DNA of 64,000 nucleotides, taken from positions 1,674,001 through 1,738,000 of the forward strand of contig NIVC01000010.1 in NCBI GenBank assembly GCA_002269645.1, read 5' to 3'. A program made the position numbers and the translations under genes. The notes beneath the pieces were generated by a model. It searched no databases. It had not been told where the DNA came from and saw only the letters and a list, made by a program, of their open reading frames with translations. Shown here in pieces: positions 3,121 to 44,558 of the stretch (positions within the stretch are counted from its first letter, which is position 1; every line of letters starts with the position of its first letter). This DNA comes from Macrostomum lignano (Eukaryota).

Positions 3121-6100
3121 TCAATTGGTTCCGGTGCGCACCAGGTGTCTGGCCAGCAGCGGATACTCATCTCGCGTCAGCAGCAGATCAATCTGGAACA
3201 GGTGGCTGACATCGTTGGCCAGGAAGTAGCCCAGAAATTTTCTCTTGCTGTCGCGGTCCGATTTCGGTATTTGAGACAGGCTCAGAGCCGCTGGAGGCTT
3301 GATCAGCACGTCGGCGAAGGTGTCAGCTTGGCGGGTATGAACAAGGTGGTTTGGATGGCCAAAATCTCTGCTTTATCTAATTAGTAATAATGAATCATAA
3401 CTGATTAAGTACACCTGCCCTAATGGGCAAATGTGCAACCGAAAGCTCAGCTGAAGGCTGCGTACGGCTGTTCAGTCCAAGGACTGAGGGAGGGGGGTCG
3501 CCACACACTCAATTACCCCAGCTAATGCTGGCACTTATTTTACAGGTGAACTAAAACAATGCAGAGTTAAGCGTCGTGCTCAAGGACACGAATTGTTCCG
3601 GGTTGAGTCGAGAATTGAACCCCCGGCCTTTCAGTCGGGAAACCGACGCTCTAAACCACTAGGCTGCAACACCTATTATATGTACATGTAATGACTTATT
3701 TGTCTACATTTACTATCACATTTACAAGCTCCTTAACTCACCAAAGAGTGGCAGATCAGTGTCATTCTCGGAGCTATGGGAATGCACCAGCTTCAGGAAT
3801 GTGATCAAATAGACGAACACGTTTGCATTGATCTCGGGAAGGCAGTTGTAAATCTGGAGGAAATTCATTGATATCCTAAACTGTGCAATGTGTACATTCA
3901 TTAAATACATGTCTTAGTTAGTAATTTAGCAGATCAATGCCACATTCACTCGCAGCTAAATAGGAGGCAAGGAGTCATGCCCATTCCATTCTACCTACCC
4001 GTGAGCACGTACACACAGCTAGACGGATGCATACAGTATTCAGGCAACAGGGTCGGTGTGCAGCATGTACACTTGCTGCGCCTTGGAAGTTGAACTAATG
4101 GTGCGAATCGAACACACGAAATCAAACTTCGGGGGTTACTTAACTGATCCGAGAGTGATTAAATATACAAATCAGTTTTGGCTTTTACTATGGGCGACCA
4201 AAAGTGAACATCGATCACGCACCTCAAGTGAGTTCTTGAAACTTTTTGACGCGTCCATAATAGTGGAGTAAAGCTGTGACGGAAACAGACTGTCGGGCAG
4301 GCAGTCGAAGAACAGCACAATCGCTTCCAGTATTGAGTAGGCGCTCACGCTCGAGATGCGACTCTCGGCATTCCACGACTCGACATTGTCCAACAGCCAG
4401 CGAATCTCTTGCAGATCTCGATGATAGCCGCCGCGTCTGAACAGGTCCGGCTTCTTTAAACAGCTCCTGCGCGCCGTTTCAACCAGTATTTTGAGCTCTT
4501 TGGGGATTAGGAAACGATGCATCGGGGATGTTTGAGCAGTTCTCGACGGGAGTGCGTAGAATCGGTACTTGGCGCTCAGAGCGTGGCTTGGCGAGAGGCG
4601 AAAGCTGTTGCCGCATCCGGCACCGTCGTCCATGATGCCTCCAATGGCCGGCTGACGCTGGTCGGTGGCCTTCATCGGAGCATTGTTGACAGGATTTTGT
4701 GCCTGCCGCTGTTGCTGCTGCGGTACCTGCTGATTTTCCTGCTGCTGTTTGTCTTGCTGCTGCTGCTGACTTGATGGCTGAGCTTGTTGCTGAACCGATT
4801 GGCCTTGATGCTTGTTCGGCGACTGTTGATGCACCTGCTGTTGCTGCTGCTGTTGCAGCAATTGTTGCAGGGTGTCGGCCTGAGCAAATCTGCCCACTGG
4901 TTGGGCCAGCTGCACCAGCTCGTCCAGCGGCATGCCGTAGCAACTACGTCGATAGGCAATTCGAGGCTTAACAGTGTAATCGCCGCCCGTCATCACGTGA
5001 ATGACGAGATGCTGCGTCAAGCAGGATGGATCGCGCAATACCTGCACATTGACTGTCTGCTTGAGCTTGATCAGCTGCACCCCGCCAGGAGGTATGATTC
5101 CATTTTGCGGCTGAATACGCATTCCGGGCGGTCCGTAGCGCATCGTGTCGTAGCAGGGGACGAAGCACCACTCGGCCGGCAGCATTCCGGGGTTTCGGAG
5201 CACAACAACGCCGTAGGCTTTCTCTAGGAAACTAACGGAACGATCAAAGTCAACCACTTGGTTGTCAATCACAACTCGAGGCATGTAGACGTCGCGAAGC
5301 ATTACGGTTTCAAGGAGGACCTTCTCTGCTTCGGTGTCGAAGCAGATGTTGTTGCGGCCGCTGCGCTGTAATGCGTTTCGGATGCACAGGTGTCAGTTTG
5401 GTTGATATACTAATGACTAGAGAGGGCTTATTGAGGAGTAAAACCTACTTTAGAAACGTTGTATCCAAGGGTTTGTACATGTACAAGTGATTAGAGCTTC
5501 GGACTCGCGACTGAAAGGTCCGGGGTTCGATTCTCGTCCCTCTCGGAACAAGTTGTGTCCCTGAGCAAGACACCCATTTAAAATTGGTGCCAGTACTAGC
5601 TCGTGTGTTTGGCGAACCCGCCCCCAGTCCCTGGACTGAACAGCCGTACGCAACCTTCATATGCACCGCGCAATAGCTGCAGCTGAGCTGTCGAATGCAC
5701 ATCTGCCCATTAGCAATGTAGCATGTGCACAAACATGTGTTGCATTAATTCATATGTCTGAGGCATCAAATTACCAAGATATTACTGAGGGTAGTAAAGC
5801 TAAAATCCTACTGTAACCATTAAACTGTACGTAAGTCACCAAGATCAAGCCCAGCGTTCTCAGCCAATCAACAACTCACCACTATGGTGAACGCGGAAGT
5901 AAGCGACAAGTACTTCTGGGTGCAACTGTGCCTCGCGTATCTGGTCTCAAGTTTCGGATAGGGACTGTTATCAACAGAGTCAACGCGTACAAAAGCTTTA
6001 GCATTGCGTACAAATTTCGATGAATGATTTATGGCGTCCATGTTAGTGAGTTCGCGCGGCGTTTTCAGTTTCACTTCCATGAACCGTTTGTCCGACGGCA

Positions 6101-8042
6101 TGTCGTTCCGATCGGTCATGAGGCCTCGCTGCATCGTGGACTGGATAGAATGAATTAATCAGGGTAAGTACGGTGAATATAGACTGCTATTTTTTATGGC
6201 TTTGAGATGTAGCACATGCACATGTAAAAATCACATTTGCAACGGTAAGCAAGTAAGCTTTTATCATTTAATCAGGCAGGCAATCTGAATTTGAACTTCA
6301 ATCTGACACCTGAGAAGCACTCCATAATCACATTGAAAAGAACGACACATAAAAATTCATAAATTTTTGAAGGCGTCATTAAATAGCGAGAGATACTTTT
6401 CGCAAACAAACACAAACTTCGATAGTCTGCTAAAATCAGTTCGATTCAGCATAGACAAATCCCCTGAAAGGACACAGTTTTCACCCTTTTCTCTGACCTT
6501 TAATGATGTTTAGATGCAAATCTTTGCGGAAAAAATCGTGTTGAAATTATTGTCTGCTTAGCACGTTAAAGAGCTACACAAAACTACACTTCAATACACA
6601 ACTATAGAGATTAAAATTGCAGTTCAGTCCATGTAAGCCCATTACTTTTATGTAGCCAAGTAACTTACGACTAGATCCTCCATTGTCTTAGCGTAGATGT
6701 TAGACCGATTAAAGTCCTTAGCAAAAGTCTCATTAAACGCGTCCAGCGGATCGGCAATTTTCGATTGTGGTACTCGAATCTGCGACTGCGAGCGACCTAC
6801 AGAGCTAGTCTTGGCCACGTTGAAGCGACCGATGGAACTGTCGGCAAAGTCCTGATTGTCACTTGCTGCCTGAGTACCAGAGAAATCAGTGTCGTAGCTT
6901 CGCTGTCTCTGCAGCATGTAGGAGGAGTGCTCGTCCGAGAACTGGCTCCGCTGACGGACGCTGCCACCGATGCCCGTGGCCGCCCGTTCACGTTCGACAA
7001 TCTCTAGCAGGGTTGCCGTGACTGGGAACTCGCCGAACGCGAATATTATGCTGCGGGTAAATTGGCCAGTTAGTGAACTGACTCTGAATGGGAGAGTGAC
7101 TGACAGGGAGACTGACAGGAAGACTGATTAACAGGGAGACTGACTGACAGCGAGCCTGATTGACAGGGAGACTGACTGATAGGGAGACTGACAGGGAGAC
7201 TGACAGGGAGACTGACTGACAGCGAGCCTGATTGACAGGGAGACTGACTGATAGGGAGACTGATTGAGTTTAGTAACTCACTGTTGATAGCTATTCTTCT
7301 TGCTAAACAAGGTTTGGTTGTGCAACCCATTGCTGGACACCAGCTCCAAGTACTCGATATCGTCAGACCACACGGCCGAGTCGGCACCCTCCATGATCAT
7401 CAGGAAGGTGAGCACGAGTTTCTGAGTTGAGCAGCGCAGTGCAAGCATGTCGTGACTAAGATAGCTCTGCCTACCACCTTTGATGTACACAAAAGCGTCC
7501 TTCTTCGTGATCAGAGTAAACAGCAGAATGGCGCTATTGCCGCAGACGAACTCGGCCAATTGACAATAAATTGTAGAAGACGACTCGCCATTGTTAATCT
7601 CGGCCAGAGCAACTTTCTTAATCTCGTCCAATTTAGCGCTGAGCCTGGAAGTTCGCACGCCTACGGCGATTAAATCAAACATATCGTCCATAGAAAACTT
7701 CTCAGTGATGGGATCTTCTGGTTCCATTTGTTTGGCGGCGTCAGTTGTCTGGTCGAGCTTTTGCACTACTCGCCTGACAGCCATGGTCTCTAGCGGCGAT
7801 AGAATGTCCAACCTGCTGATGGAGTCGTCCTTGCACTTGCAGTAAGACAGCTTCACGTTGAGCTGCATCTGCAGTTCAATCTCTTGAAATCTGTTGGCCA
7901 GTCGTCGCTGAAAGATGGACATGAAGCGCGTGTCCAGTGGCGGGTGGGTGGACTCGAACGGGCTGGTGTTCAGCTGCAGCCGATCAAACAGCTCCCGGAT
8001 GGGGTGGTTCATTGCGTACTGCTTTCTGGATTCGTCCGCCAT
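3121..8042 (-). CDS. OCRL: OCRL/INPP5B-like protein (degenerate inositol 5-phosphatase fold + ASH + RhoGAP-like domain), ~954 aa
   Basis: Exons 8042-7282, 7050-6669, 6140-5880, 5365-4223, 3853-3742, 3326-3121 total 2865 nt, are phase-consistent and all GT-AG. ASH-like segment: MPRVVIDNQVVDF..RNPGMLPAEWCFVP..QPQNGIIPPG. The ASH/GAP junction SCYGMPLDEL resembles OCRL SCFGTSLEAL. IPKELKILVE..DLF resembles VPKEIWLLVD..DLF. NVFVYLITFL..ADTFADVLIKPP resembles NVFRYLMAFL..ATLFTSLLLRPP. The C-terminus SDRDSKRKFLGYFL resembles SDRQRAIQFLLGFL. Confidence 0.9.
3412..3664 (-). mobile_element. tRNA-derived SINE copy 1 (OCRL intron 5)
   Basis: On the minus strand: tRNA-like head (GCCTAGTGGTTTAGAGCG..GGGGGTTCAATTCTC), then GTGTCCTTGAGCACGAC..CCAGCATTAGCTG..GGACTGAACAGCCGTACGCA, shared with the copies at 5487 and 48427. 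Confidence 0.75.
5487..5712 (+). mobile_element. tRNA-derived SINE copy 2 (OCRL intron 3)
   Basis: B-box GGGGTTCGATTCT, then GTGTCCCTGAGCAAGACAC..GGACTGAACAGCCGTACGCAACC..GCACATCTGCCCATTAG. Homologous to copy 1, in inverted orientation. Confidence 0.75.
7095..7265. repeat. GACT/GACAGGGA-based minisatellite in OCRL intron 1
   Basis: Repeated GACAGGGAGACTGACT units fill most of the 231-bp intron. Confidence 0.85.
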
Positions 8043-8975: not shown

Positions 8976-10294
8976 TCAGAATGACTCTACAACTCCAGCT
9001 CGCAGTGACCTCAGCCCACTGAGAATCCTTGATCGACAGGTGAAAAGCGCGACAAGCACGCTGGACAGCATCAGAATGACCACCAGAGCCGTCAGTGCTG
9101 AAATCGAAACACGGGGTGGTCACTGAGCCTGGCACAAACGTGCAAATTTTAAAGCCTCAGTCAGCAAAAAGATGCGCCCACCTGGAGACTCAACCAGCTG
9201 CTCACTCTGAGCAGAGCTCTGACCGCAGCTCGAGATGGAGAGCCGAGCCCTAAAGCCGGACCTCGCTCCGCTGTACGCGAGACTCATTCCGCTGTCCACC
9301 GCTTGCAGGCTGGCCTCAACGCGGAATTTGAACTGCGAGTTCGAGCCGCAGACCTCTCGCTGACTGCGCTCGACCGACGCTGCCAGAGAGTCCCAGTGAG
9401 ACGCAGTCAGCACGAGCTGCTTGAGTCCGCACACCGTACTGAACTTGTCCAGCTTCACTTCCAGCTTCCAGCAGCTGATGTTTGACACCGTGGAGATTTC
9501 AGTAGCAGTGCTTGCAACTTTGGTGCGGTTCGCGATTCGAGCAGCAGTGAAGGCATCCAGCTGCAGTTTGCAGTCAGTCTGAGTGTTGTCGGGAGCGACT
9601 GTCACAGTGGTGAGCAGCTCTGTACCGTCTGCGCTCAGCTGCCACTGCTCACTTGAGCTGTCGATTCGCGAGCAGACTTCAACTGTGTGAATGCAATTGG
9701 GTGTGAAAAGTTTTGACATTCATTTGTGCCTGTCATATTCTTACACTTTTATACATACTCTTAGCTGCAGTTTGAGACATCAGTGAAATGCACCTTGGTC
9801 CACGATGATTGACCCAACGATACTCTCTTCGGATTGGAAGCCGTGGAATTCGGCATTTGCTACTTCCGAGTCGTTTCTGTTGGCTCCTTCAGCACCAGTT
9901 GATGGATTTTCTGGCGACGCCGAGGTTACATCGACCGTCAGCGTTTCGCCTTCGCTCACTCGGAGCCTGTCCTGCAGTCGCAGTCGGCCAGGAATGTCGT
10001 GGTCGCAGATGCTGAGCTTCGTCTCCCTCTCTCTTTGAGGTGCAGAAATGATGAAGCTGAGCTTCGGGTGATGGAGCAGTGAGCTGATTTCATAGCAGAA
10101 TCGCTCCTGATAGTCATTGGAGGCGTGCATTTTCAGCTGAACAATCGGGTCATGGCCAGGTGGCGGAGTCATCCTTATTAAACAATAGTGCGAGAGCGAC
10201 AAACCAAAAATGGGCAATATTATTGGGCTGTACAGAACCAGCCGCGATTCCCAATGTTTCTGTGGAACATATCTATGGCAAAGGCGACTGAAAT
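8976..10294 (-). CDS. 3' fragment (last 3 exons) of a CUB-family type-I membrane protein paralogue, copy A; no upstream exons found
   Basis: Exons 10294-9794, 9682-9182 and 9097-8976 are open and phase-1 linked. The last exon encodes a TM helix (ALTALVVILMLSSVLVALFTC) and a short tail. Homologous to the last 3 exons of copies B and C. Confidence 0.7.
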
Positions 10295-10709: not shown

Positions 10710-11385
10710 TGGTGAGTAGCGTTGCTACTCTGAGTTAGCGAACACGTCGGGGAGGGGCCGCCCCGGGTCTGTGTGGGCTCTCCGGTGTGCGTGCTCTGTC
10801 TGGCGGGGGGAGGGGTGGGTGCTTGAGTCCCCCCCCGGCCCTTGGGGGTTTTTTAGGCCGCGCGGGGCTGCTCTGGCCCAGCTACCCTGTCTCGCGTTTG
10901 CAAGCTCAATTTTGCAATTTCTCAATTTCGCGTTTGTCAGCCAACTTGCTAAGCATGAATCACAACAGCGAAGACACTGCTGAAAAGCGCCTAGAAAACT
11001 ATACCGCACGTGAGTTAAGGCGCATGCTGGAACAACATGGTCTGTCCAGTTCTGGAAAGAAGGCAATCCTCATAGATCGCCTACGATCGGCACGCCATGA
11101 GGACACCGATGAGACGCGAACATCTACGGCCAGCAAGAGAGCAGAGAGCGGCCCGGGAGGACGGCAGGCGGCGTCGGACCTGGATGTTCAAGCGGAAATC
11201 CAAGCTGCAGAGAGGCGCATCCGGCTGCTGGAACTCCAGGCAAAAGAGCGACAACTCAGAAGAGAGGCCCAAGCGTCGGAGGATCTCGAACCCCACCGGG
11301 CGGCACCTGAGAACCCGGAAGACCTTGGTGAGTTACTCAACGCTGTTAACAATGAGGCCACCCAGGACCAATGCTCGAAGCGAAT
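10710..11385 (+). mobile_element. truncated LTR-retrotransposon 5' portion: PBS-like TGG start, GC-rich leader and SAP-domain gag-like ORF
   Basis: TGGTGAGTAGCG at ~10711. The ORF MNHNSEDTAEKRLENYTARELRRMLEQHGLSSSGKKAILIDRLR fits the SAP consensus (LxxxELKxxLxxxGLxxSGxKxxLIxRL) and is followed by a coiled coil. It is cut off at a (GATT)n tract. Confidence 0.5.
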
Positions 11386-11428
11386 GATTGATTGATTGAA
11401 TGATTGAATGATTGATTGAATGAATGAT
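11383..11428. repeat. (GATT/GAAT)n microsatellite
   Basis: Read directly from the sequence. Confidence 0.85.
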
Positions 11429-27885: not shown

Positions 27886-30709
27886 GCCAAGATCTAAAGG
27901 AACTGGTGGCAGCACTACCTACACTACTAAGAGCTAATAGAAGGCTTCTAGTTAAGAAGCCAGAGAGCCCAAATCACTGTGCTAGGAGAAGCATAGGTAC
28001 AATGTTAGCCATTCTATGTTTTACTTTGGGAATCAGATTTTCAGAGTAACCTATTTGTTAAATTTTTGGCATGCATAGGGAATTTGGTGACATGCTCAAA
28101 ATCTAAAAATTCTGGGATGTTGTGAATTGAAGCTATTTTATAAGATTGGAAATAGTGATATTCTATATGGATATGGCAAGATTTGTCTAGTAATCACATT
28201 TATTCAGATTTAGACTTTCAAATATGAAATAAAAATTTATAATTAAATTTATTCCAGCCTGTATCTGTTAACCTACTTTGCTATGATGCCAACAATTTGT
28301 GCTAGAAAACACTCCATCTAAAATAAAAAGCTAATAGTTGTTTGCATGACTAGAAGCTATGGCAGACCAAAGAAAACTGTGGTAACCAGCTCCTCAACAG
28401 TACAAGCAGTTGCTCTGGGTGCTAGTGTAAATAAATAAACTCTAGCGTCGATTTTGAGGTTCCATTCTTTCTAAGCCAGCTTAACAGTAATGCTATCATT
28501 GAAAATTAGCCTAATTTTGTTAAATGGGAAGACTATGCATCAATTGTCAAAGATTATTATACTGACTGCTATAAACAATCCTTTGTCTTAGGCTGTTGTA
28601 TCTGTTGCGGCATTGAGCCTAGTGTTTTCCGGTGTGTTACCTGTCAACTTGATCTATGTAGTGGTTGCCATGACATAACACATGGAGAATTTGCACCTTA
28701 AAAATATCTCTTATGGAATGTAAGTTGCTCTAAACTTATAATTATAAGCTACTATCCCTATTGAATGTACTAGTTTTCATTTTATTAGCATATTGTCATT
28801 TTTATTTAAGGTAATTATTTTTTAATATCAATTGGAATTGTTCAATAAGATTCCAGACAAGGAAAATCTTATTGTCCTATTTGGATTAGAAAACATAATT
28901 CAAAAGACTGCAACTCTGTAATTATAAATAGGTCTAAACAAAATTAAATAAAGCAATACTCAACTATTTATAAAATTTATAAAATTTTAGGTTTAATATC
29001 TTTCAAGATTTGCAAAGTAATTTTCTATTTAAAAATAGAATAGCTATCACTAAAAGGGTATTTTTCTTGTCACCAAAATGACTTTTGCTTGTCACTGAAA
29101 GGACTGTCACCAAAACGACTATAATCCTACACTTAGGAAAGTGTAAACTATGGTGGAAAATTCTAGGCACATTAACATAAGTCACTGAAATGTATAATCT
29201 GCATATACAATGCCTAAAAGATGCTTTTAGGTTATGTTTTTTTCTAAACATATCAATTAAAAAATTGTTTCTTAGTAAGTGAAATAAATAAAAAAATTCA
29301 ATGTGGGATTTTCATTTTATTGTAAAGTTTAGGCCTAAGCTAGGGCCTAATTCTATTGACAATTTTCTACATGAGCTAAAAAAATTACAAAGTTTTGAGT
29401 TGAAAAAAGCCTTCAAAAAGTACAAAAATTTATCCATTTTTTGTTTTTGTTTTAGTTGGACTTTTACTTTGAGTTTTTTTAATACTAGGCTACGGCACAT
29501 TAGTACTCTAGCTATGTATTGGTCAATAAATGAATGTAGGCCTTGGCACACAAATTTATATTTTAGCTTTGCACATAGTGCACACTCCAAAAATATGTTA
29601 GAATATATTCCCAAACACACGCACACATGATACCTTCCTGAGTGTGGCTGTAATCTAGTGCAAATGCCATAGTAACTTATCTAGATAAGCTTGAAATATT
29701 TTATGATAAGGTTTGCACTGTAGCTTAGAAATAGGCCTATCAGATTAGGCCTATTAACCATAGGCCTAGAACCAAACCGCTTACTTAGGCTGACCATATA
29801 AACTTCTACTTAATTACTTACATTTACATGCCTTAGTTAGAATCACAGAATGTCAGTTAGGAAAAATATAATTTCAAAATATTTTTCATTAACATTATAG
29901 GCATGTAATTTAAAGAAAATTTCTAAATAATTTATTAAAATTTAACAAACAAAAGGGAATATATGCTTATCATGTCATGCTAACTTTAGATTGGCCAGTT
30001 AGCCTCAGGAGGAACACTATTAGTAGAAACTCTTGGCTTTCCTACCATGACACAATTGCCAGACTACATAGGCCTAGTAATAGTAATAGCAATAGAATAA
30101 ACTTGCATCCTGAACTGATGCCTGGCCCTGGCTACAGTGGATTGGATTGGATCCCTATATTTTTTAATATAACTGCTGCCGCCCGGCTGTACGCCAGTAG
30201 TAGTAGTAGTAGTAAATTGGCTCAGGCAAGAAGCCTGTTTGGCCAATATATTTCTGTGTATTTAATATTACTTCAGGAATAGGAGACAGTATTTTAGCAT
30301 TAGTTATTTAATTACGATTACACTTAGTACGAGTTTTGCAATATGTAAAGTATTTTTATGTATCAATTAAATCTCCGCACTTTTTATGATGTGTCCGGCA
30401 TTCTTGAATATTATTTAGTTAGTATTTATTCAGTAGTGAGTTTCTATTTCCGCGATTCTTACTGTACGTACTTTACTACTATTGTTTTACTGTATGCTAA
30501 TTCCTATCGTATTTCAAACGCGAATGCGCTGTGTTTTGGTGTTAGTTCTCCTGTGCGCCGTAGTAGTTGTAGTTGTAGGGTTGCATAGCCGTTCCAGAGT
30601 TCCAGGCGATCCAGTTTTAATTCAATAATAGATATAGACATTATTTAGAAAATTCTTAATTACCTTGACTATACATAGATTGTTCAGATACGAATACAAA
30701 TATATAAAT

Positions 30710-34109: not shown

Positions 34110-35339
34110 ATGCCACCAAAGAAAGTAGTGCCTACAGGCAAATTAACAAAGACAAAAAGTGCTTCAAATACTAGCAAACCAAAGACAAGGTCTACTACTA
34201 AAAACAAGGCAAATAGTCAGCAAGTGCCATTATCATCAGTTGCTACTGAACACTTGTGTCCATCTAAAAGTGCTAATAACAGTGCTCAGCCAATCAAATC
34301 CGAGGTTGAAGCTCCTAAAATAGTAACTCAAACAAACCAAGAATGTGATTCAATTTCTGTTACAAATCCGGTAGACTATTCAAGGCCTAATCAATATCCA
34401 ATTAACTCTTTACCAGTTGCTAGTCATCTTTTGCAACCTATTGAATCTAAGTACCAAGCTATGCAAATTCAATTGTCGCCAATTCCAAAGCCAATGCCAT
34501 TTAATGGAAAAGAAAATTTTGCGGATTTCCTATGCCGGATTGAAAGCTACATCAGTAGGTTTTCAAATTTAACTGAAGCAATTAAAATTCAAACTTTATC
34601 AGCATTCTTAGGATCAGCATTTTGTACTTATCGCTCGTGGCTCTCAACTATTTATGTAACGCATGGTGTGCCTGTCAACACTCTATTAGAAAATATTCCA
34701 AATGTCACTTTCTTGGAATGCACAGAATTTCTCCGAGGCCGCCATGGTGAGAAAAGCAATGTTGTTCTACGCCGTGAACTTAGAAATCTATCTAGGAGAC
34801 CAACAGAGACATTTGAGCAATTTCTTACTGCTTTACAAAACCTGGCTATCCAGGCCTACCCAGATGCAATTGCTACTGAAGTTGTGCAAACTATGATCTT
34901 AGATCAGTTCATAACTGGCATCAATGACCTCAAGGTCATGGAGCATCTATCAAATCTCACCAACTTGGAGACAGCAGAACAGGCCTTGCAGATTGCACAA
35001 CAAGTCCGTGAGACACAGCAACTCTTGGCAAAAGCACCAGTGAGTAGTCAGCAAATCTCCTTAGTACAACCAGAAAGCCATCAAAACAAGCAATCGTTAC
35101 CACCGAAAAGTAACCAGCCACAACCAAAGTATCATCAGCAGCAAAAATCTACGCAGAACCAACCAAAGTCCAATCAGCCAGCAAATAACAACTTTCAGCA
35201 ACAACAGAAATATCCTAATCAGCAAGCAAGGTACCAACAGGTCACTTGCTTTAGATGTGGCCAACTTGGACATGTGCAAAGAGTGTGCCCAAACTTGATG
35301 CAGGCTGGATCAGGGGCCAGACCCCAGCCTCATCATTGA
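34110..35339 (+). CDS. gag: Gypsy Gag with CCHC zinc knuckle
   Basis: 409-aa ORF with PMPFNGKENFADFLCRIE capsid-like region, LDQFITGI and CFRCGQLGHVQRVCP. Confidence 0.92.
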   Translation: MPPKKVVPTGKLTKTKSASNTSKPKTRSTTKNKANSQQVPLSSVATEHLCPSKSANNSAQPIKSEVEAPKIVTQTNQECDSISVTNPVDYSRPNQYPINSLPVASHLLQPIESKYQAMQIQLSPIPKPMPFNGKENFADFLCRIESYISRFSNLTEAIKIQTLSAFLGSAFCTYRSWLSTIYVTHGVPVNTLLENIPNVTFLECTEFLRGRHGEKSNVVLRRELRNLSRRPTETFEQFLTALQNLAIQAYPDAIATEVVQTMILDQFITGINDLKVMEHLSNLTNLETAEQALQIAQQVRETQQLLAKAPVSSQQISLVQPESHQNKQSLPPKSNQPQPKYHQQQKSTQNQPKSNQPANNNFQQQQKYPNQQARYQQVTCFRCGQLGHVQRVCPNLMQAGSGARPQPHH

Positions 35340-38300
35340 GTGGCCCAATTCTGAGGAGAAAGACCAAGTGCCAGAACCAGTAACTGTAAATGTAAACTGT
35401 ATGTCAACTAATGTTATGTATGTTTCTACTAAATTCTTTGGCAAAAATATTCCATGTCTAATAGATACCGGTGCTTCAGCTACAATCATAAATTCAAGTT
35501 TAATTAACAAATCAAAGTACCAAGTAAGAGCTTCTAATGTCAAATTACAAGCTGCAAATGGTAAACAGCTTTCTGTATTAGGAGAAATGACAATCAAATT
35601 TAATTTTGGAGATATTGTCTGTCAGCAAGAAGTCATCATCTGCAAAGACATTCAGCATTCAGTCATCCTAGGATGTGATTTCTTTACTAATTTCAATGTA
35701 TCTATCCATCCAGCAGAAGGCATGATCACATTTAATAATCAGAACAGAAGTTTCCCAACTAGAAAAACAACAGAAGTTCAGAGAAGCTGCAAGATCATCG
35801 CAACTGAAACTGTCCAGCTTAAACCAGGACAAGCAGCAACTATTTCCATTGCACCAAAGATGTCAACTCAGTCAATGGCACCAGGACTAGTCCAGTCGAA
35901 CAAAAGAATCCCAGGACTCTTGGCTGCTAGAACTGTTGATTTAATAAAGAATGAAGGCATGTACATCAATATTATCAACTCGAACTCGAACAGAGACTTA
36001 ACCATCAAGAAAGGTTCGTTAGTTGGTTCCTTCACCCCTCTAGATTGCAGAGGAGAGACCTGCATTGTCGTCGAAGAAGTAGCAGATAAATCCGAGTCTG
36101 GTAGCAAAGAAGAGACTGAAGATGCAGAGAAAACATTCAAAATTTCTCCAGATCTCACAGAAGCTGAAAGGAAATCTGTTAGTGACATCCTAGATGAGTA
36201 CAGCGACATATTTTCAAGAGATGGCAAGCTTGGTCGAACTGCTTTACTGAAACACTCGATAAATACTGGCACAGCAATGCCTGTCAGAGAGACATTAAGG
36301 AGAGCAGCACTGCCAACCATCAAGGAGCAGGAGAAGTTGATTCAACAAATGCTTGATGATAAAGTCATTCAGCCGTCAACATCACCGTGGGCTGCACCTG
36401 TCATTCTGGTGAAAAAGAAGGACGGAAGCTCTCGTTTTTGCATTGATTTCAGAAAACTGAATGCTGCAACTAAACCTGATGCATTCCCTGTGCCAAGAAT
36501 CGACGACATGCTAGATGCTTTAGCAGATAACGTTTACTTTTCTGCATTAGACTTGCAAGCAGGCTACTGGCAAGTAGAAATGGAAGAAAAAGATCGCGAG
36601 AAAACCGCATTTGTCTGTCACCATGGACTCTTTGAATTTAATGTTATGCCCTTTGGCTTACGCAATGCACCATCAACTTTTCAAAGACTCATTCAGATGG
36701 TCATTCAAGGCTTAAATTGGGAAGCATGCTTAGCTTACATCGATGATGTTATTGTTATGGGTAAAACGTTAGATATTCACAACGAGAGACTCAAACAAGT
36801 TTTTGAACGATTAAGAGCAGCAAATCTTCGCCTTAAACCTAGTAAGTGCAATTTTGCTGCCAAGTCGCTTAAGATCTTAGGTCATGTGATAACGCCTCAA
36901 GGAATAGCAGTAGACGATGAGAAGATTGATTCTATTAAGAGATGGCCAACACCAACGAATCAGAAAGATGTTAGAAGTTTTCTAGGCCTGTCATCATATT
37001 ACAGACGATTCATTAAAGACTATTCAAAGATTTCCGAGCCCTTAAGAGTGCTGACAACTGATAAGAAATTTACCTGGACCGACGAGGCAGAGCAAAGTTT
37101 CATTCGCCTTAAGTCCGCCTTAACATCGGCACCTATCTTAGCATTGCCAATAATGACAGGCGAAGACTCCGAATTTGTTCTAGATACTGATGCTAGCGAC
37201 TTTGCCATAGGATGCGTTTTATCACAGCAACAGAATGGCGAAGAAAAAGTGATTGCCTATGGAAGTCGAGTGCTCAGCACCGCCGAAAAGAATTACTGCG
37301 TGACTCGCCGAGAACTACTAGCAGTAGTCGAGTTTGTTAAAAAGTTTAGGTCATATCTAGCGCCAAAGAAGTTTACAATCAGGGTAGATCACCAGGCGTT
37401 GACCTACTTACTACAGTTCAAAGAACCTAATGGCCAATTAGCTCGATGGATCGAATCTCTTCAGGAGTTTAACTTCGAGATACTCTACCGGCCAGGTAAA
37501 CTGCATTCCAACGCAGACGCTTTATCACGCAGGTGTACAAGACCGTGCGAATCTTGTCGACCTAGCAAAGCAATTTCAGATGCAGAATGTCAAACTGACG
37601 AAGATCAGACTGTCGCAGCTGTTTTGTCTAGAAGGAAACAAACGCTGGTTCCAAGGAAATCCGAAAGCGAGGACGAAAGTGAGTTAATAGACGAAGCTGA
37701 GCAGAGTGAGACTGAAGAGGAGCCGAGTATGCGTGCACTGCAGTTACAGGATCCAGGAATTGGACCAGTATTTCGGAAGCTAGCCAATGGAAAAACAGCG
37801 TTTGAAACTGGAGAACGAGATAGAATGTCACCAGAAAGTTTGAGCCGCCTTATGTCCAAAGCCGACGAATTGTGCTTCGTTAACGGTGTAATGCATTATT
37901 TATTCAAGACTAAGCCTGTTCTAGTACTGCCGCAGTGTAAACGAGAAAGCTTCATTAAAGAAATTCATGAGTTAGGTCACTTTAGTGTCGAAAAGACAAG
38001 AACATCTGTCAAGAAGCGTGCCTACTGGCCAAAATTAGCCCTGGATGTTGAACTATTTGTCAGGTCATGCATTCCGTGTCAAAGATCTAGGCCAACATCA
38101 ATCACTCGAGGCCCTCTGCAGCCGATAGCTACAGGATTTCCTATGCATCGCATTGGAATCGACATAGTAAAAGTGGCTACCTCGAGGCAAGGCAATAATC
38201 GATTGCTTACGATAGTCGACTACTTCACTAAGTGGGCCGAATTAATACCAATTCCTGACGAACGAGCGAACACCGTTGCGAAGGCAATATTCGACGTGTG

Positions 38301-39090
38301 GATATCGAGATGGGGAGCACCGCATATCATTCACTCCGATCGGGGTAGCAACGTGGACGGCAAAGTCATCAAGAGTCTCTGCAAAATATTTGACATTCAA
38401 AAAACTCGCACTACCTATTTCCATCCTCAGTGTGACGGTCTTGTAGAAAGATTCCATAGAACATTGCATAGCGTGCTACGATGCTACCTGCAAACGGTGG
38501 AACCCGAAGACTGGCAAGATGTTATTCCTCATTGCCTTCTGGCCTATCGAAGCACCGTCCACAGCAGCACCGGCTTTACGCCTCATTTCCTGATGACTGG
38601 GCGAGAAGTTACGCTTCCTCTTGATATTGTATATCGACTGGCTGAACCGGCCAGCACTGCTGTAACTTTCGCCAGCTCCACAAAAGAGTCTCTACTGAAA
38701 GCATTTGAAGCTGTGAGAGAGTCTGTTGATTTAGCACAGCGCCGCCAGAAGAGATATTATGATAGAAAGTCCAAGAAAAAAGGGTTCAAGGTTGGATCAT
38801 TGGTCTGGATTTTTATCCCACCATCTGTCCTACGGCAGCGTGAACCTCGCTGGTCTGTCAAACACCACGCTCCATGGACTGGACCTTTCCGTGTCACCCG
38901 GAAGTTGACCAGCCTGACCTATGAAGTGAAGTCGATTGACGAACATCAGAAAGTAAAGATCGTAAATGTAGAGAAGATGAAACGCTACATTGAGCCGCGT
39001 AGACAACAAGGGTTGTGGCAAGACGAAGAGGCTGACGAAAGAGAACAAGAACCAGAAGAAAGCGTCGAAGAGGAATGGGTCATTGTGTAG
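35299..39090 (+). CDS. pol: Gypsy Pol (protease, RT, RNase H, integrase); frame open from 35299
   Basis: LIDTGA (PR); SPWAAPVILVKKKDG..FCIDFRKLN and YIDDV (RT); LDTDASD (RH); H-H-C-C, GIDIV..IHSDRG..VERFHRTL (IN); C-terminal GPF-like motif. Confidence 0.96.
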   Translation, partial: CRLDQGPDPSLIIEWPNSEEKDQVPEPVTVNVNCMSTNVMYVSTKFFGKNIPCLIDTGASATIINSSLINKSKYQVRASNVKLQAANGKQLSVLGEMTIKFNFGDIVCQQEVIICKDIQHSVILGCDFFTNFNVSIHPAEGMITFNNQNRSFPTRKTTEVQRSCKIIATETVQLKPGQAATISIAPKMSTQSMAPGLVQSNKRIPGLLAARTVDLIKNEGMYINIINSNSNRDLTIKKGSLVGSFTPLDCRGETCIVVEEVADKSESGSKEETEDAEKTFKISPDLTEAERKSVSDILDEYSDIFSRDGKLGRTALLKHSINTGTAMPVRETLRRAALPTIKEQEKLIQQMLDDKVIQPSTSPWAAPVILVKKKDGSSRFCIDFRKLNAATKPDAFPVPRIDDMLDALADNVYFSALDLQAGYWQVEMEEKDREKTAFVCHHGLFEFNVMPFGLRNAPSTFQRLIQMVIQGLNWEACLAYIDDVIVMGKTLDIHNERLKQVFERLRAANLRLKPSKCNFAAKSLKILGHVITPQGIAVDDEKIDSIKRWPTPTNQKDVRSFLGLSSYYRRFIKDYSKISEPLRVLTTDKKFTWTDEAEQSFIRLKSALTSAPILALPIMTGEDSEFVLDTDASDFAIGCVLSQQQNGEEKVIAYGSRVLSTAEKNYCVTRRELLAVVEFVKKFRSYLAPKKFTIRVDHQALTYLLQFKEPNGQLARWIESLQEFNFEILYRPGKLHSNADALSRRCTRPCESCRPSKAISDAECQTDEDQTVAAVLSRRKQTLVPRKSESEDESELIDEAEQSETEEEPSMRALQLQDPGIGPVFRKLANGKTAFETGERDRMSPESLSRLMSKADELCFVNGVMHYLFKTKPVLVLPQCKRESFIKEIHELGHFSVEKTRTSVKKRAYWPKLALDVELFVRSCIPCQRSRPTSITRGPLQPIATGFPMHRIGIDIVKVATSRQGNNRLLTIVDYFTKWAELIPIPDERANTVAKAIFDVWISRWGAPHIIHSDRGSNVDGKVIKSLCKIFDIQKTRTTYFHPQCDGLVERFHRTLHSVLRCYLQTVEPEDWQDVIPHCLLAYRSTVHSSTGFTPHFLMTGREVTLPLDIVYRLAEPASTAVTFASSTKESLLKAFEAVRESVDLAQRRQKRYYDRKSKKKGFKVGSLVWIFIPPSVLRQREPRWSVKHHAPWTGPFRVTRKLTSLTYEVKSIDEHQKVKIVNVEKMKRYIEPRRQQGLWQDEEADEREQEPEESVEEEWVIV

Positions 39091-40478: not shown

Positions 40479-40481
40479 TAA

Positions 40482-40973
40482 TGTAAAGTATTTTTATGTA
40501 TCAATTAAATCTCCGCACTTTTTATGATGTGTCCGGCATTCTTGAATATTATTTAGTTAGTATTTATTCAGTAGTGAGTTTCTATTTCCGCGATTCTTAC
40601 TGTACGTACTTTACTACTATTGTTTTACTGTATGCTAATTCCTATCGTATTTCAAACGCGAATGCGCTGTGTTTTGGTGTTAGTTCTCCTGTGCGCCGTA
40701 GTAGTTGTAGTTGTAGGGTTGCATAGCCGTTCCAGAGTTCCAGGCGATCCAGTTTTAATTCAAAAATAGATATAGACATTATTTAGAAAATTCTTAATTA
40801 CCTTGACTATACATAGATTGTTCAGATACGAATACAAATATATAAATGAAATGAATTAAGGCGCATTGCATCCACAAGCCAAGAACGCATTCGGCATTCG
40901 TTCATTCATCTGTCATCACAACGAAAATAAGGCGATTCTTTGAATTCTTGGACTTCAAGAAACTTATTTTACA
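40482..40973 (+). repeat. 3' LTR (492 bp)
   Basis: TGTAAAG...TTTTACA, containing TATAAAT. Confidence 0.96.
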
Positions 40974-42258: not shown

Positions 42259-44558
42259 ATGCTCGTATTGCTGAGACGACATGGTTGGCTCTTACTGGTT
42301 TTTATCGGTAAAAGCCGCAAGTCTTAGTCATAGTTAGTGCAACAGAAAACTCATCTTACGAGTATTTAAACAAAAAAGAATTCTAAAAAGAGCCCAGTAG
42401 AATGCGCTTAGTTCGAATTTTCACCAGGTTGTTCTTCAACGGTTCGCATGCAGCAACTGCACCAGTCCTGTGAGAGTTGTTGATCGGCTTGACAAGCCAG
42501 GCCTCTCTGGATGGGACCTGACTTCACAGAATACTTCGATAACAATGCATCCAAGTATGAGCCAACTTGAACCGGGACAGCTCCAGACTTTGGGTCGCGA
42601 ATACACTAATCAGCTTGGGACCCGCGAGCATAAAACTTAAATTCAGTCGCCAAGTGACGATGGATCTTAAATACGCAATCGATATTATTCAGCACTTCCC
42701 AATTGCAAAGCCTGGATCCCAAGGTAAATTGGCTCAATCAAAAAATGTCAATAAGAATCTGCAGTTTGCTCAGCTAAACCAGCTGTCTCAACGAAGAGTA
42801 TCATAATAAAAAATAAAAAGATCGGTCGTTTGATGTCGGTTAGACAGTTGACGCTAAAATCAAGTGTTGATTGCATCGCTGATCAAAGCATTCTTTAACC
42901 TGTAAGCATGAAATTCCACTGTTTTGTTTTGAAGGTGACAAAAACCGGGTTCATAACAAGAATTTCATTTCGTTTTCAGTTGGCAAAAGGCATTGGAGTC
43001 CAGATTTCTGCCAACTGCTCACAGAATCTTCCAGTCGCTGTGGAGGCGGAGAGAACCGGGGGCTTTACAGTTTTGTTAGAAAAACTGGACTTCTTGTTTG
43101 GTACGTACGAGTACTTGTATTGGATGCTTACCACTGTAATGGAGCGCTTTTTTAACATAGGAGCTCGCATATATTTCTACATTGAAAAATCGCACAAACT
43201 ATTCTCTATCTTGACAAATCGCAGATTTAGATCCAGTTTGCCCCAGATACACGAAAGAAAGGCATTGGGAAATGCAGCTCTTTCTGTATAGCCCAACTCG
43301 TTTTCGCCGCTTCGGTCACATACACGTGTTCTTCTGCGAAACGCCAATTGCTTCCTCACCTGGCCATGACCTGATTGTTCAGCTGAAAATGCACGCCTCC
43401 AATGACTATCAGGAGCGATTCTGCTATGAAATCAGCTCACTGCTCCATCACCCGAAGCTCAGCTTCATCATTTCTGCACCTCAAAGAGAGAGGGAGACGA
43501 AGCTCAGCATCTGCGACCACGACATTCCTGGCCGACTGCGACTGCAGGACAGGCTCCGAGTGAGCGAAGGCGAAACGCTTACGGTCGATGTAACCTCGGC
43601 GTCGCCAGAAAATCCATCAACTGGTGCCGAAGGAGCCAACAGAAACGACTCGGAAGTAGCAAATGCCGAATTCCACGGCTTCCAATCCGAAGAGAGTATC
43701 GTTGGGTCAATCATCGTGGACCAAGGTGCATTTCACTGATGTCTCAAACTGCAGCTAAGAGTATGTATAAAAGTGTAAGAATATGACAGGCACAAATGAA
43801 TGTCAAAACTTTTCACACCCAATTGCATTCACACAGTTGAAGTCTGCTCGCGAATCGACAGCTCAAGTGAGCAGTGGCAGCTGAGCGCAGACGGTACAGA
43901 GCTGCTCACCACTGTGACAGTCGCTCCCGACAACACTCAGACTGACTGCAAACTGCAGCTGGATGCCTTCACTGCTGCTCGAATCGCGAACCGCACCAAA
44001 GTTGCAAGCACTGCTACTGAAATCTCCAAGGTGTCAAACATCAGCTGCTGGAAGCTGGAAGTGAAGCTGGACAAGTTCAGTACGGTGTGCGGACTCAAGC
44101 AGCTCGTGCTGACTGCGTCTCACTGGGACTCTCTGGCAGCGTCGGTCGAGCGCAGTCAGCGAGAGGTCTGCGGCTCGAACTCGCAGTTCAAATTCCGCGT
44201 TGAGGCCAGCCTGCAAGCGGTGGACAGCGGAATGGGTCTCGCGTATAGCGGAGTGAGGTCCGGCTTTAGGGCTCGGCTCTCCATCTCGAGCTGCGGTCAG
44301 AGCTCTGCTCAGAGTGAGCAGCTGGTTGAGTCTCCAGGTGGGCGCATCTTTTTGCTGACTGAGGCTTTAAAATTTGCACGTTTGTGCCAGGCTCAGTGAC
44401 CACCCCGTGTTTCGATTTCAGCAACCTCGGGCTCCGTGTCACCTACACTGATTTCTGTACTGGTCATTCTGATTCTGTGCAACGCTCTTGTTGCATTGTT
44501 TGTTTGTCGGACAAAGCTTTTCAGTGCTCTGAGGTCGCTTCGAGCTCCACAACCGTAG
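42259..44558 (+). pseudogene. CUB-family membrane receptor paralogue B, internally collapsed, frameshifted, with a nonsense codon
   Basis: Signal-peptide-like MLVLLRRHGWLLLVF. Exon-2 relic SNCTSPVRVV..GLSGWDLTS matches C exon 2 and has two frameshifts, then joins LISLGPASIKL..QHFP (matches C exon 8). Exon 42765-42901 has TAA at 42896-42898. Exons 42980-43100, 43225-43725, 43837-44337 and 44422-44558 (TM) are open. Confidence 0.75.

What the first reader, a model, noticed from the sequence alone, without database searches (positions are those of the whole stretch)
5880..8042. OCRL/INPP5B paralogue with every 5-phosphatase catalytic motif replaced: candidate pseudophosphatase
The domain order and scaffold align to OCRL, but each catalytic motif is substituted. 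GTWNV becomes LSYCK; DIYCIGFQE becomes DLIAVGVRT; NKGGV is absent; NSHLAA becomes LMIMEG; WLGDLNYR becomes AFGEFPVT (7020-7034); PAWCDRIL becomes AFVRVDSV; SDHKPV becomes QKYLSL. All 6 exons stay open and in phase, which argues for a constrained dead enzyme rather than a pseudogene. No N-terminal PH domain is encoded, and an ~100-aa S/R-rich insert follows the GEFP motif. The alignments are by eye from remembered human sequences.
Basis: partly seen in the sequence, partly recalled or inferred. Interest (0 to 1): 0.78.

Follow-up and report, generated by a model that had tools for sequence, protein, structure and literature searches.

The report
OCRL-like gene without recognisable phosphatase domain
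An intact six-exon gene joins the tail of the Lowe-syndrome enzyme OCRL (ASH plus RhoGAP-like domains) to a 468-residue front half that shows no measurable resemblance to a phosphatase, so a non-catalytic OCRL relative is plausible but the claimed dead-enzyme scaffold is not shown.

Summary
A minus-strand gene runs from 8042 to 3121. It has six GT-AG exons in phase and encodes 954 aa. The finding's coordinates (5880-8042) cover only exons 1-3, aa 1-468.

The OCRL/INPP5B relationship is real, but it lies entirely in exons 4-6. These encode a linker helix, an OCRL-like ASH domain (Pfam 9.5e-8) and a RhoGAP domain (2e-15). The best PDB match is OCRL ASH-RhoGAP (1e-24).

Exons 1-3 look like genuine coding sequence: GC3 and codon usage match exons 4-6. 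They show no detectable similarity to 5-phosphatases in any test: Pfam, PDB, Smith-Waterman against shuffles, a 121-sequence family HMM with filters off (-1.7 bits), hhalign (probability 0.4%), and extension anchored on the ASH domain.

Shuffled sequences do as well in 167 of 500 trials. "Every motif replaced" therefore cannot be told apart from "unrelated sequence".

Single-sequence AlphaFold2 of exon 1 gave pLDDT 37-42, which is unusable. The spliced protein could not be submitted. No orthologues were found.

Verdict: an OCRL-family paralogue with no recognisable 5-phosphatase domain. Whether the N-terminal part is a decayed EEP fold or a replacement is unresolved.

The parts
7282..8042 (-). 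Exon 1 (aa 1-254, ATG at 8042). This is the N-terminal region of unknown fold and holds LSYCK, DLIAVGVRT and LMIMEG.
   Evidence: An open 254-codon frame, with an in-frame stop 9 codons upstream of the ATG and a GTGAGT donor. No Pfam, PDB or large-database homologue. AF2 pLDDT 41.7 and 37.0.
6669..7050 (-). Exon 2 (aa 254-381). It contains AFGEFPVT and the S/R/Q-rich, probably disordered, stretch aa 269-352 (7007-6756).
   Evidence: CCGCAG acceptor and GTAAGT donor, in phase. Composition.
5880..6140 (-). Exon 3 (aa 382-468). It contains AFVRVDSV and QKYLSL.
   Evidence: TCCAG acceptor and GTGAGT donor, phase 0. Extension anchored on the ASH domain shows no 5-phosphatase signal: real score 1.9 bits against a shuffle mean of 1.9.
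4223..5365 (-). Exon 4 (aa 469-849). It encodes the linker helix (from about aa 481), the OCRL-like ASH domain (aa 501-600 = 5269-4970), a Q-rich loop (aa 621-750 = 4909-4520) and the start of the RhoGAP-like domain (from aa 756 = 4504).
   Evidence: Pfam PF21310 at 9.5e-8 and PF00620 at 2e-15. PDB OCRL 3qis/2qv2 at 1e-24. The family HMM aligns aa 481-636. There is an in-frame stop 10 codons upstream of the acceptor and no start codon before M492.
3742..3853 (-). Exon 5 (aa 850-887), the middle of the RhoGAP-like domain.
3121..3326 (-). Exon 6 (aa 887-954 plus the TGA stop), the end of the RhoGAP-like domain (to aa 898 = 3292) and the C-terminal tail.
7090..7267 (.). A 16-bp tandem repeat that fills most of intron 1 (231 nt).
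5491..5659 (+). A tRNA-like SINE copy in intron 3. An inverted partner lies at 3452-3654 in intron 5.
   Evidence: inverted pairs I1 and I2. ARAGORN and Rfam call neither copy as a tRNA.

Best explanation
The region is part of an intact six-exon gene (8042 to 3121, minus strand, 954 aa).

The C-terminal half is a true OCRL/INPP5B-family module: linker helix, ASH domain, a Q-rich loop, and a RhoGAP-like domain.

The N-terminal 468 aa (the finding's coordinates) sit where OCRL carries its 5-phosphatase domain. They have no detectable relationship to the 5-phosphatase/EEP family or to any other described family.

Shown: the product lacks every canonical 5-phosphatase signature.

Inferred: it cannot hydrolyse phosphoinositides by the canonical mechanism. 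It most likely acts as a non-catalytic adaptor that uses the ASH/RhoGAP-like module to dock onto Rab and/or Rho-family GTPases and endocytic membranes. It could compete with, or complement, a canonical OCRL encoded elsewhere.

Unresolved: whether the N-terminal part is a decayed EEP fold (a true pseudophosphatase) or a non-homologous replacement. The sequence evidence leans against a merely motif-substituted scaffold.
For: - Gene model: five GT-AG introns, all in phase, giving a 954-aa open frame.
- Coding signal: GC3 is 0.65 in exons 1-3 and 0.657 in exons 4-6, against an overall GC content of 0.35-0.51 in the introns. The RSCU correlation between the two halves is 0.62 in frame and about 0.06 out of frame.
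- C-terminal module: OCRL-like_ASH 9.5e-8 and RhoGAP 2e-15. OCRL 3qis/2qv2 are the best PDB hits at 1e-24, with both domains aligned.
- Exon 4 is internal: the family HMM picks up the linker helix from aa 481, upstream of the first possible start codon of exon 4.
- No 5-phosphatase signal in aa 1-500: Pfam at E<=10 finds nothing. PDB at E<=10 finds nothing relevant. Smith-Waterman z-scores are -0.18 and +1.09. The 121-sequence HMM with filters off gives -1.7 bits. hhalign gives probability 0.4% and 0.1%. Anchored extension equals the shuffle mean. The motif-placement test gives 167/500.
- No canonical 5-phosphatase exon anywhere in the 64 kb.
Against: - No transcript evidence exists for any splice junction, in particular exon 3 to exon 4.
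- No orthologue was found, so constraint (dN/dS) is untested.
- The adaptor function is inferred only from what OCRL's ASH/RhoGAP-like module does (PMC4278560).
- The window protein differs from OCRL at F668 (T), W739 (K), A797 (C) and P801 (S) in the alignment. From my own recollection, not checked here, these positions matter for Rab and F&H-motif binding. OCRL's partners may therefore not be shared.
- AlphaFold2's low-confidence secondary structure for aa 140-217 is a meander of 5-6 beta strands after two helices. This is compatible with an EEP half-sheet, though not specific to one.
Confidence: 0.6

Rival explanations
1. Residues 60-468 would still adopt the EEP/5-phosphatase fold inherited from an OCRL-like ancestor. 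All catalytic and most core residues would be substituted, with an insert of about 84 aa, and the domain would be kept as a structural or binding module.
For: - Position and size fit. About 400 aa lie directly upstream of the linker helix and ASH domain, or roughly 320 aa without the S/R/Q-rich stretch, compared with about 300 aa in OCRL.
- In OCRL and INPP5B the ASH/RhoGAP-like module sits directly behind the 5-phosphatase domain (PMC4278560). That this holds in every family member is my own knowledge.
- hhalign's non-significant alignment also pairs DLIAVGVRT with DIYaIGFQE.
Against: - Every statistical test is null.
- A functionally diverged member of the fold, Cimex nitrophorin, still matches OCRL at about 1e-19.
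- The normally less conserved ASH/RhoGAP half of this same protein is still detected at 1e-24. The loss of signal is therefore strikingly one-sided.
- The spacing agreement between motifs was chosen by eye and is not independent evidence.
Confidence: 0.25
2. There are two genes. Exons 1-3 would be a separate lineage-specific gene ending at the stop four codons past the exon 3 donor (...TIVVSC*). Exons 4-6 would be a 5'-truncated OCRL-derived gene or fragment with its own upstream exon or start.
For: - Reading through the exon 3 donor meets a TGA after four codons.
- All OCRL similarity is confined to exons 4-6.
- The chance that a donor and an acceptor agree in phase is 1 in 3.
Against: - Exon 4 has no start codon upstream of M492 and has an in-frame stop 10 codons upstream of its acceptor, yet OCRL-like similarity begins at aa 481. 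It must therefore be spliced to something upstream.
- Exon 3 is the nearest upstream exon, has a consensus GTGAGT donor and is in phase.
- No AATAAA is seen in the sequence following exon 3 (read directly).
- Codon usage of the two halves matches.
Confidence: 0.15
3. The locus is a decaying, unexpressed duplicate: an OCRL-derived pseudogene whose frame happens still to be open.
For: No homologue or transcript evidence is available. The gene sits in a region rich in repeats and transposons.
Against: - A 954-codon spliced frame has no stop and five canonical introns.
- Strong third-position GC and in-frame codon bias are present in exons 1-3 as well.
- Neutral decay sufficient to erase all 5-phosphatase similarity would have introduced stops and frameshifts.
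Confidence: 0.07

Closest known systems
OCRL1 / INPP5B (inositol polyphosphate 5-phosphatases with ASH and RhoGAP-like domains)
   Same: - The order linker helix, ASH, loop, RhoGAP-like at the C-terminus is the same.
- The best PDB hits are OCRL 3qis/2qv2 (1e-24), and Pfam's OCRL-like_ASH model matches.
- G664 of OCRL is kept.
   Different: - There is no recognisable 5-phosphatase domain or motif.
- No clathrin box lies in the ASH-RhoGAP loop and there is no FEDNF-type AP-2 motif. The loop is replaced by a stretch of about 130 aa that is 29% Q.
- An Arg sits at the arginine-finger position (DLFRRGG), where OCRL has Gln.
- F668, W739, A797 and P801 are substituted.
Myotubularin-related pseudophosphatases (e.g. 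MTMR5/9/13)
   Same: The proposed logic is the same: a phosphoinositide phosphatase paralogue without catalytic residues that acts as an adaptor or regulator. This rests on my own knowledge. The papers that mention both OCRL and 'pseudophosphatase' concern mainly this family, judging from titles and abstracts.
   Different: MTMR pseudophosphatases belong to a different fold (PTP). To my knowledge they keep clearly detectable homology to their active relatives, whereas here homology of the N-terminal part to the enzyme is not detectable.
Cimex nitrophorin (a 5-phosphatase/EEP-fold protein re-used as a haem/NO carrier)
   Same: It is an example of a 5-phosphatase-fold protein that has left phosphatase function.
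   Different: It is still found by OCRL's catalytic domain at about 1e-19, whereas the window's N-terminal region scores below zero bits. It also has no ASH/RhoGAP module.

Membership tests
Inositol polyphosphate 5-phosphatase (IPPc; EEP superfamily; Pfam PF22669/PF03372) | Significant match of the sequence to the family profile | tested here: not met
   Pfam finds nothing at E<=10. My own HMM of 121 OCRL/INPP5B/synaptojanin sequences, with filters off, gives -1.7 bits. hhalign gives probability 0.4%.
Inositol polyphosphate 5-phosphatase (IPPc; EEP superfamily; Pfam PF22669/PF03372) | Signature motif 1, WxGDxN(F/Y)R | tested here: not met
   A regex search of the 954-aa product finds neither the full motif nor the relaxed GDxN[FY]R.
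Inositol polyphosphate 5-phosphatase (IPPc; EEP superfamily; Pfam PF22669/PF03372) | Signature motif 2, P(A/S)W(C/T)DR(I/V)L, and the SDHxP histidine | tested here: not met
Inositol polyphosphate 5-phosphatase (IPPc; EEP superfamily; Pfam PF22669/PF03372) | EEP alpha/beta-sandwich fold | tested here: inconclusive
   Only exon 1 could be submitted. It gave pLDDT 41.7 and 37.0, and Foldseek against the PDB gave no hit with E<=0.001.
Inositol polyphosphate 5-phosphatase (IPPc; EEP superfamily; Pfam PF22669/PF03372) | 5-phosphatase activity on PI(4,5)P2 or inositol phosphates | not testable with these tools
   This needs recombinant protein and an enzyme assay.
OCRL/INPP5B subfamily | ASH domain directly after a linker helix | tested here: met
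   PF21310 at 9.5e-8, aa 501-600. OCRL 3qis/3qbt alignments. The family HMM aligns aa 481-636.
OCRL/INPP5B subfamily | C-terminal RhoGAP-like domain | tested here: met
   PF00620 at 2e-15, aa 756-898. The OCRL RhoGAP-like domain aligns to aa 753-924.
OCRL/INPP5B subfamily | Central 5-phosphatase domain between the N-terminus and ASH | tested here: not met
   No such exon is present anywhere in the window.
OCRL/INPP5B subfamily | N-terminal PH domain | tested here: inconclusive
   There is no Pfam hit (PF16726/PF16776) in aa 1-280. [quoted passage not shown]
Pseudoenzyme (pseudophosphatase) | Demonstrable homology of the dead domain to the active enzyme's catalytic domain | tested here: not met
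   All sequence tests are null. The structural test is inconclusive.
Pseudoenzyme (pseudophosphatase) | Purifying selection on the dead domain | not testable with these tools
   No orthologue was retrievable. The only indirect support is the intact frame and gene-like codon bias.

The most novel reading that the evidence does not exclude
The N-terminal 468 aa are an EEP/5-phosphatase domain diverged beyond sequence recognition and kept under selection. That would make this a natural OCRL-family pseudophosphatase; my two literature searches found none described. It would dock through its ASH/RhoGAP-like module, possibly with a restored arginine finger, and would modulate canonical OCRL signalling without catalysis.
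Probability: 0.25. Interest if true: 0.65.

Novelty: new variant of a known kind. Interest (0 to 1): 0.4.

Why it matters
OCRL and INPP5B are defined as 5-phosphatases that carry an ASH/RhoGAP-like targeting module. A review states that D. discoideum, Drosophila melanogaster and C. elegans each have a single homologue with a RhoGAP-like domain (PMC4278560).

A second family member that keeps the targeting module but has no recognisable catalytic domain would be a natural separation-of-function allele. It could show what the ASH/RhoGAP module does without lipid hydrolysis, a question relevant to how non-catalytic OCRL mutations act in Lowe and Dent-2 disease.

At present this is only an un-transcribed, orthologue-less gene model from an unidentified animal genome. 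The practical value is a lead, not a result.

Tried and rejected
Exon 1 alone gave 0 hits.
2. Word-indexed protein searches with aa 1-538 and with ASH plus RhoGAP gave no hits. All 120 listed hits of the control search with OCRL catalytic domains were 522 aa or shorter. That database therefore seems to lack long proteins, and 'no homologue' is weak evidence.
3. Metagenome contig scans with exon 1 and with exon 4 found nothing.
4. Exact-sequence contig look-ups for four window ORFs, intended to identify the organism, found nothing. Rfam and ARAGORN found nothing. The species remains unidentified. The ASH domain's best match among the retrieved proteins is an Artemia franciscana OCRL-like protein (43 bits), which is too distant to place the organism.
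5. AlphaFold2 on exon 1 (253 aa) and on aa 56-253 gave pLDDT 41.7 and 37.0. Foldseek matches were meaningless.
6. I considered feeding AlphaFold2 an alignment of exon 1 with OCRL catalytic domains. I rejected this as circular, because the alignment would impose the fold.
7. A weak blastp match of aa 348-392 to the DIFAIGFQE-plus-helix region of synaptojanin fragments (E 1.2 in a 120-sequence database) was rejected.
8. Two literature searches for a described OCRL-family pseudophosphatase found none.
Full report
**What is at the coordinates**

The window is animal-like nuclear DNA. It has spliced genes, a Ty3/gypsy element, CUB-domain ORFs and many satellites.

On the minus strand an ATG at 8042 opens a 254-codon frame. 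An in-frame stop lies nine codons upstream of it.

Reading the sequence directly and assembling it by script gives six exons:
- 8042-7282
- 7050-6669
- 6140-5880
- 5365-4223
- 3853-3742
- 3326-3121

The donors are GTGAGT, GTAAGT, GTGAGT, GTGCGT and GTGAGT, and every intron ends in AG. All junctions are in phase. The product is 954 aa and ends at a TGA.

The finding's range (5880-8042) is exons 1-3 only, aa 1-468. The stretch after GEFP is indeed S/R/Q-rich (aa 269-352).

**Is it coding?**

GC at third codon positions is 0.65 in exons 1-3 and 0.657 in exons 4-6. Overall GC content of the introns is 0.35-0.51. Relative synonymous codon usage of exons 1-3 correlates with that of exons 4-6 at r = 0.62 in frame and about 0.06 in the other two frames.

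Exons 1-3 are therefore real coding sequence with the same bias as the recognisable half of the gene. They are not open by chance.

**The part that really is OCRL-like**

- Pfam finds OCRL-like_ASH (aa 501-600, 9.5e-8) and RhoGAP (aa 756-898, 2e-15).
- Against all PDB sequences, the best hits are the OCRL ASH-RhoGAP crystal constructs 3qis and 2qv2 (1e-24), aligned over both domains.
- tblastn with human OCRL touches only exons 4 and 6. I recalled the OCRL sequence from memory. Its catalytic domain and ASH-domain start were checked directly against 4cmn, 3qis and 3qbt, and the RhoGAP-like part agrees with the 3qis alignment printed.
- A family HMM that I built from 121 OCRL/INPP5B/synaptojanin sequences aligns from the linker helix (aa 481) through ASH.

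All this similarity lies outside the finding's coordinates.

Exon 4 has no start codon before M492 and has an in-frame stop 10 codons upstream of its acceptor. The similarity nevertheless starts at aa 481. Exon 4 is therefore an internal exon, and exon 3 is the nearest in-phase partner with a consensus donor. This is inference; no transcript data were available.

**The part claimed to be a dead 5-phosphatase**

- Pfam at E<=10, on three different cuts including one with the insert removed: nothing.
- phmmer against the PDB at E<=10: only a nanobody at E 0.84.
- Smith-Waterman against the crystal sequences of the OCRL and INPP5B catalytic domains, with 300 shuffles: z = -0.18 and +1.09.
- The 121-sequence family HMM with all filters off: -1.7 bits, while the same HMM finds the ASH region.
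- hhalign of the N-terminus, with and without the insert, against the catalytic alignment: probability 0.4% and 0.1%, P = 0.15 and 0.46.
- Extension anchored on the ASH domain, shuffling only aa 400-468 or 380-468: the real score equals the shuffle mean.
- Six-frame scan of the whole window with the catalytic HMM: nothing below E = 0.3.
- Regex for the two classical signatures WxGDxN(F/Y)R and P(A/S)W(C/T)DR(I/V)L, and for SDHxP: absent.

This totals -12 in BLOSUM62, with 3 identities in 42 positions. If the six OCRL motifs are placed in the best collinear way on the real sequence the score is 63. Shuffled sequences average 59.6, and 167 of 500 reach 63.

'Every motif replaced' is thus exactly what an unrelated sequence would show. 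The agreement in motif spacing follows from choosing the counterparts by eye at the expected distances.

**Structure**

The spliced protein could not be handed to the structure or large HMMER tools. Exon 1 alone, without any alignment, gave mean pLDDT 41.7. Residues 56-253 gave 37.0. Foldseek against the PDB returned no match with E<=0.001.

The only consistent feature of these poor models is two helices followed by a meander of five or six beta strands at aa 140-217. An EEP half-sheet would look like this, but so would many other folds. The fold question is open.

**Relatives**

No homologue of exon 1, of aa 1-538 or of the C-terminal half was retrieved from the protein collections or from metagenome contigs. 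Exact look-ups of window ORFs failed too.

A control search with OCRL catalytic domains returned 4234 hits, but all 120 listed are 522 aa or shorter. Long proteins seem to be missing from that collection, so the absence of hits says little about whether orthologues exist. Constraint (dN/dS) therefore could not be measured.

**Interpretation**

What is shown:
- an intact gene of the OCRL/INPP5B family by its ASH/RhoGAP-like module;
- a 468-aa N-terminal region where the phosphatase should be;
- no 5-phosphatase signature in the gene or in the 64-kb window.

What is inferred:
- The protein is not a canonical 5-phosphatase.
- It probably works as a non-catalytic adaptor through the module that in OCRL binds Rab GTPases, Rac1/Cdc42 and F&H-motif adaptors (PMC4278560).

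Several points advise caution about shared partners.
- OCRL positions F668, W739, A797 and P801 are T, K, C and S here. That these positions matter for Rab and F&H binding is my recollection, not something checked here.
- The clathrin-box loop is replaced by a stretch of about 130 aa that is 29% Q and has no clathrin box.
- An Arg occupies the arginine-finger position that OCRL has lost (DLFRRGG against DLFQTPG, and ARHGAP5 GLYRVSG).

**Pseudophosphatase or replacement?**

For descent from a 5-phosphatase domain:
- The position and size fit.
- In OCRL and INPP5B the ASH/RhoGAP-like module follows a 5-phosphatase domain (PMC4278560). That this holds across the whole family is my own knowledge.

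Against it, the loss of signal is extreme and one-sided.
- OCRL's catalytic domain is about 50-55% identical to the OCRL-like proteins of the crustaceans Artemia and Armadillidium.
- A re-purposed member of the fold, Cimex nitrophorin, is still found at about 1e-19.
- The normally faster-evolving ASH/RhoGAP half of this very protein is still found at 1e-24.

I put the true-pseudophosphatase reading at about 0.25, the two-gene reading at about 0.15, and a decaying pseudogene at below 0.1. The statement I commit to, at about 0.6, is an OCRL-family paralogue without a recognisable or active 5-phosphatase domain, with the origin of the N-terminal part unresolved.

**Novelty**

Two full-text searches found no described OCRL-family pseudophosphatase. 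Judging by titles and abstracts, the papers that mention both OCRL and 'pseudophosphatase' mostly concern the myotubularins.

If the gene model holds, this is a new variant of a known kind. As evidence stands, it is a lead of moderate interest that needs transcript, orthologue and structure data.

Noticed in passing
window 9096-10162 and 43357-44423: An inverted repeat of 1067 nt at 99% identity, with arms 33 kb apart. Each arm carries the same 199-aa ORF and part of a second shared ORF; neither has a Pfam match. The proximal arm ends about 1 kb upstream of the OCRL-like gene's ATG.
   Followed up: partly
window 34110-39090; direct repeats at 30343-30642 and 40481-40780: An apparently intact Ty3/gypsy retrotransposon. 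It has a gag ORF with a zinc knuckle and a 1240-aa pol ORF with protease, RT, RNase H and integrase. Identical 300-nt direct repeats 10.1 kb apart may be its LTRs, which would suggest a recent insertion.
   Followed up: partly
window 47402-48004, 48975-49598, 50194-50802, 60492-60929: Four plus-strand ORFs each contain a CUB domain (Pfam 1e-8 to 1e-12). They may be exons of a multi-CUB gene or a tandem gene cluster.
   Followed up: partly
window 4442-4459 (aa 771-776, DLFRRG): The RhoGAP-like domain has an Arg at the arginine-finger position, where human OCRL has Gln. By eye, the other canonical RhoGAP catalytic positions do not look conserved. GAP activity is an open question.
   Followed up: partly
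window 5491-5659 (+) and 3452-3654 (-): Two copies of a tRNA-like SINE lie in opposite orientation in introns 3 and 5 of the gene. Neither is called as a tRNA by ARAGORN or Rfam.
   Followed up: partly
window 7090-7267: A tandem repeat with a 16-bp unit (GGGAGACTGACTGACA, about 12 copies) fills most of the 231-nt intron 1.
   Followed up: yes
window 12.7-15.5 kb, 18.4-19.1 kb, 21.0-22.0 kb, 44.4-45.8 kb: Long micro- and minisatellite blocks. Examples are an 8-nt unit around 18.5 kb and a 34-nt unit at 98% identity at 21.0-22.0 kb. They produce spurious long ORFs in several frames.
   Followed up: no
window 10787-11395: A plus-strand ORF with a SAP domain (Pfam 1e-8), lying just beyond the proximal arm of the inverted repeat.
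   Followed up: no
protein database behaviour: All 120 listed hits to the OCRL catalytic profile are 522 aa or shorter, although OCRL proteins are about 900 aa. The large protein collections seem to lack long proteins, which weakens any 'no homologue' conclusion for this 954-aa product.
   Followed up: partly
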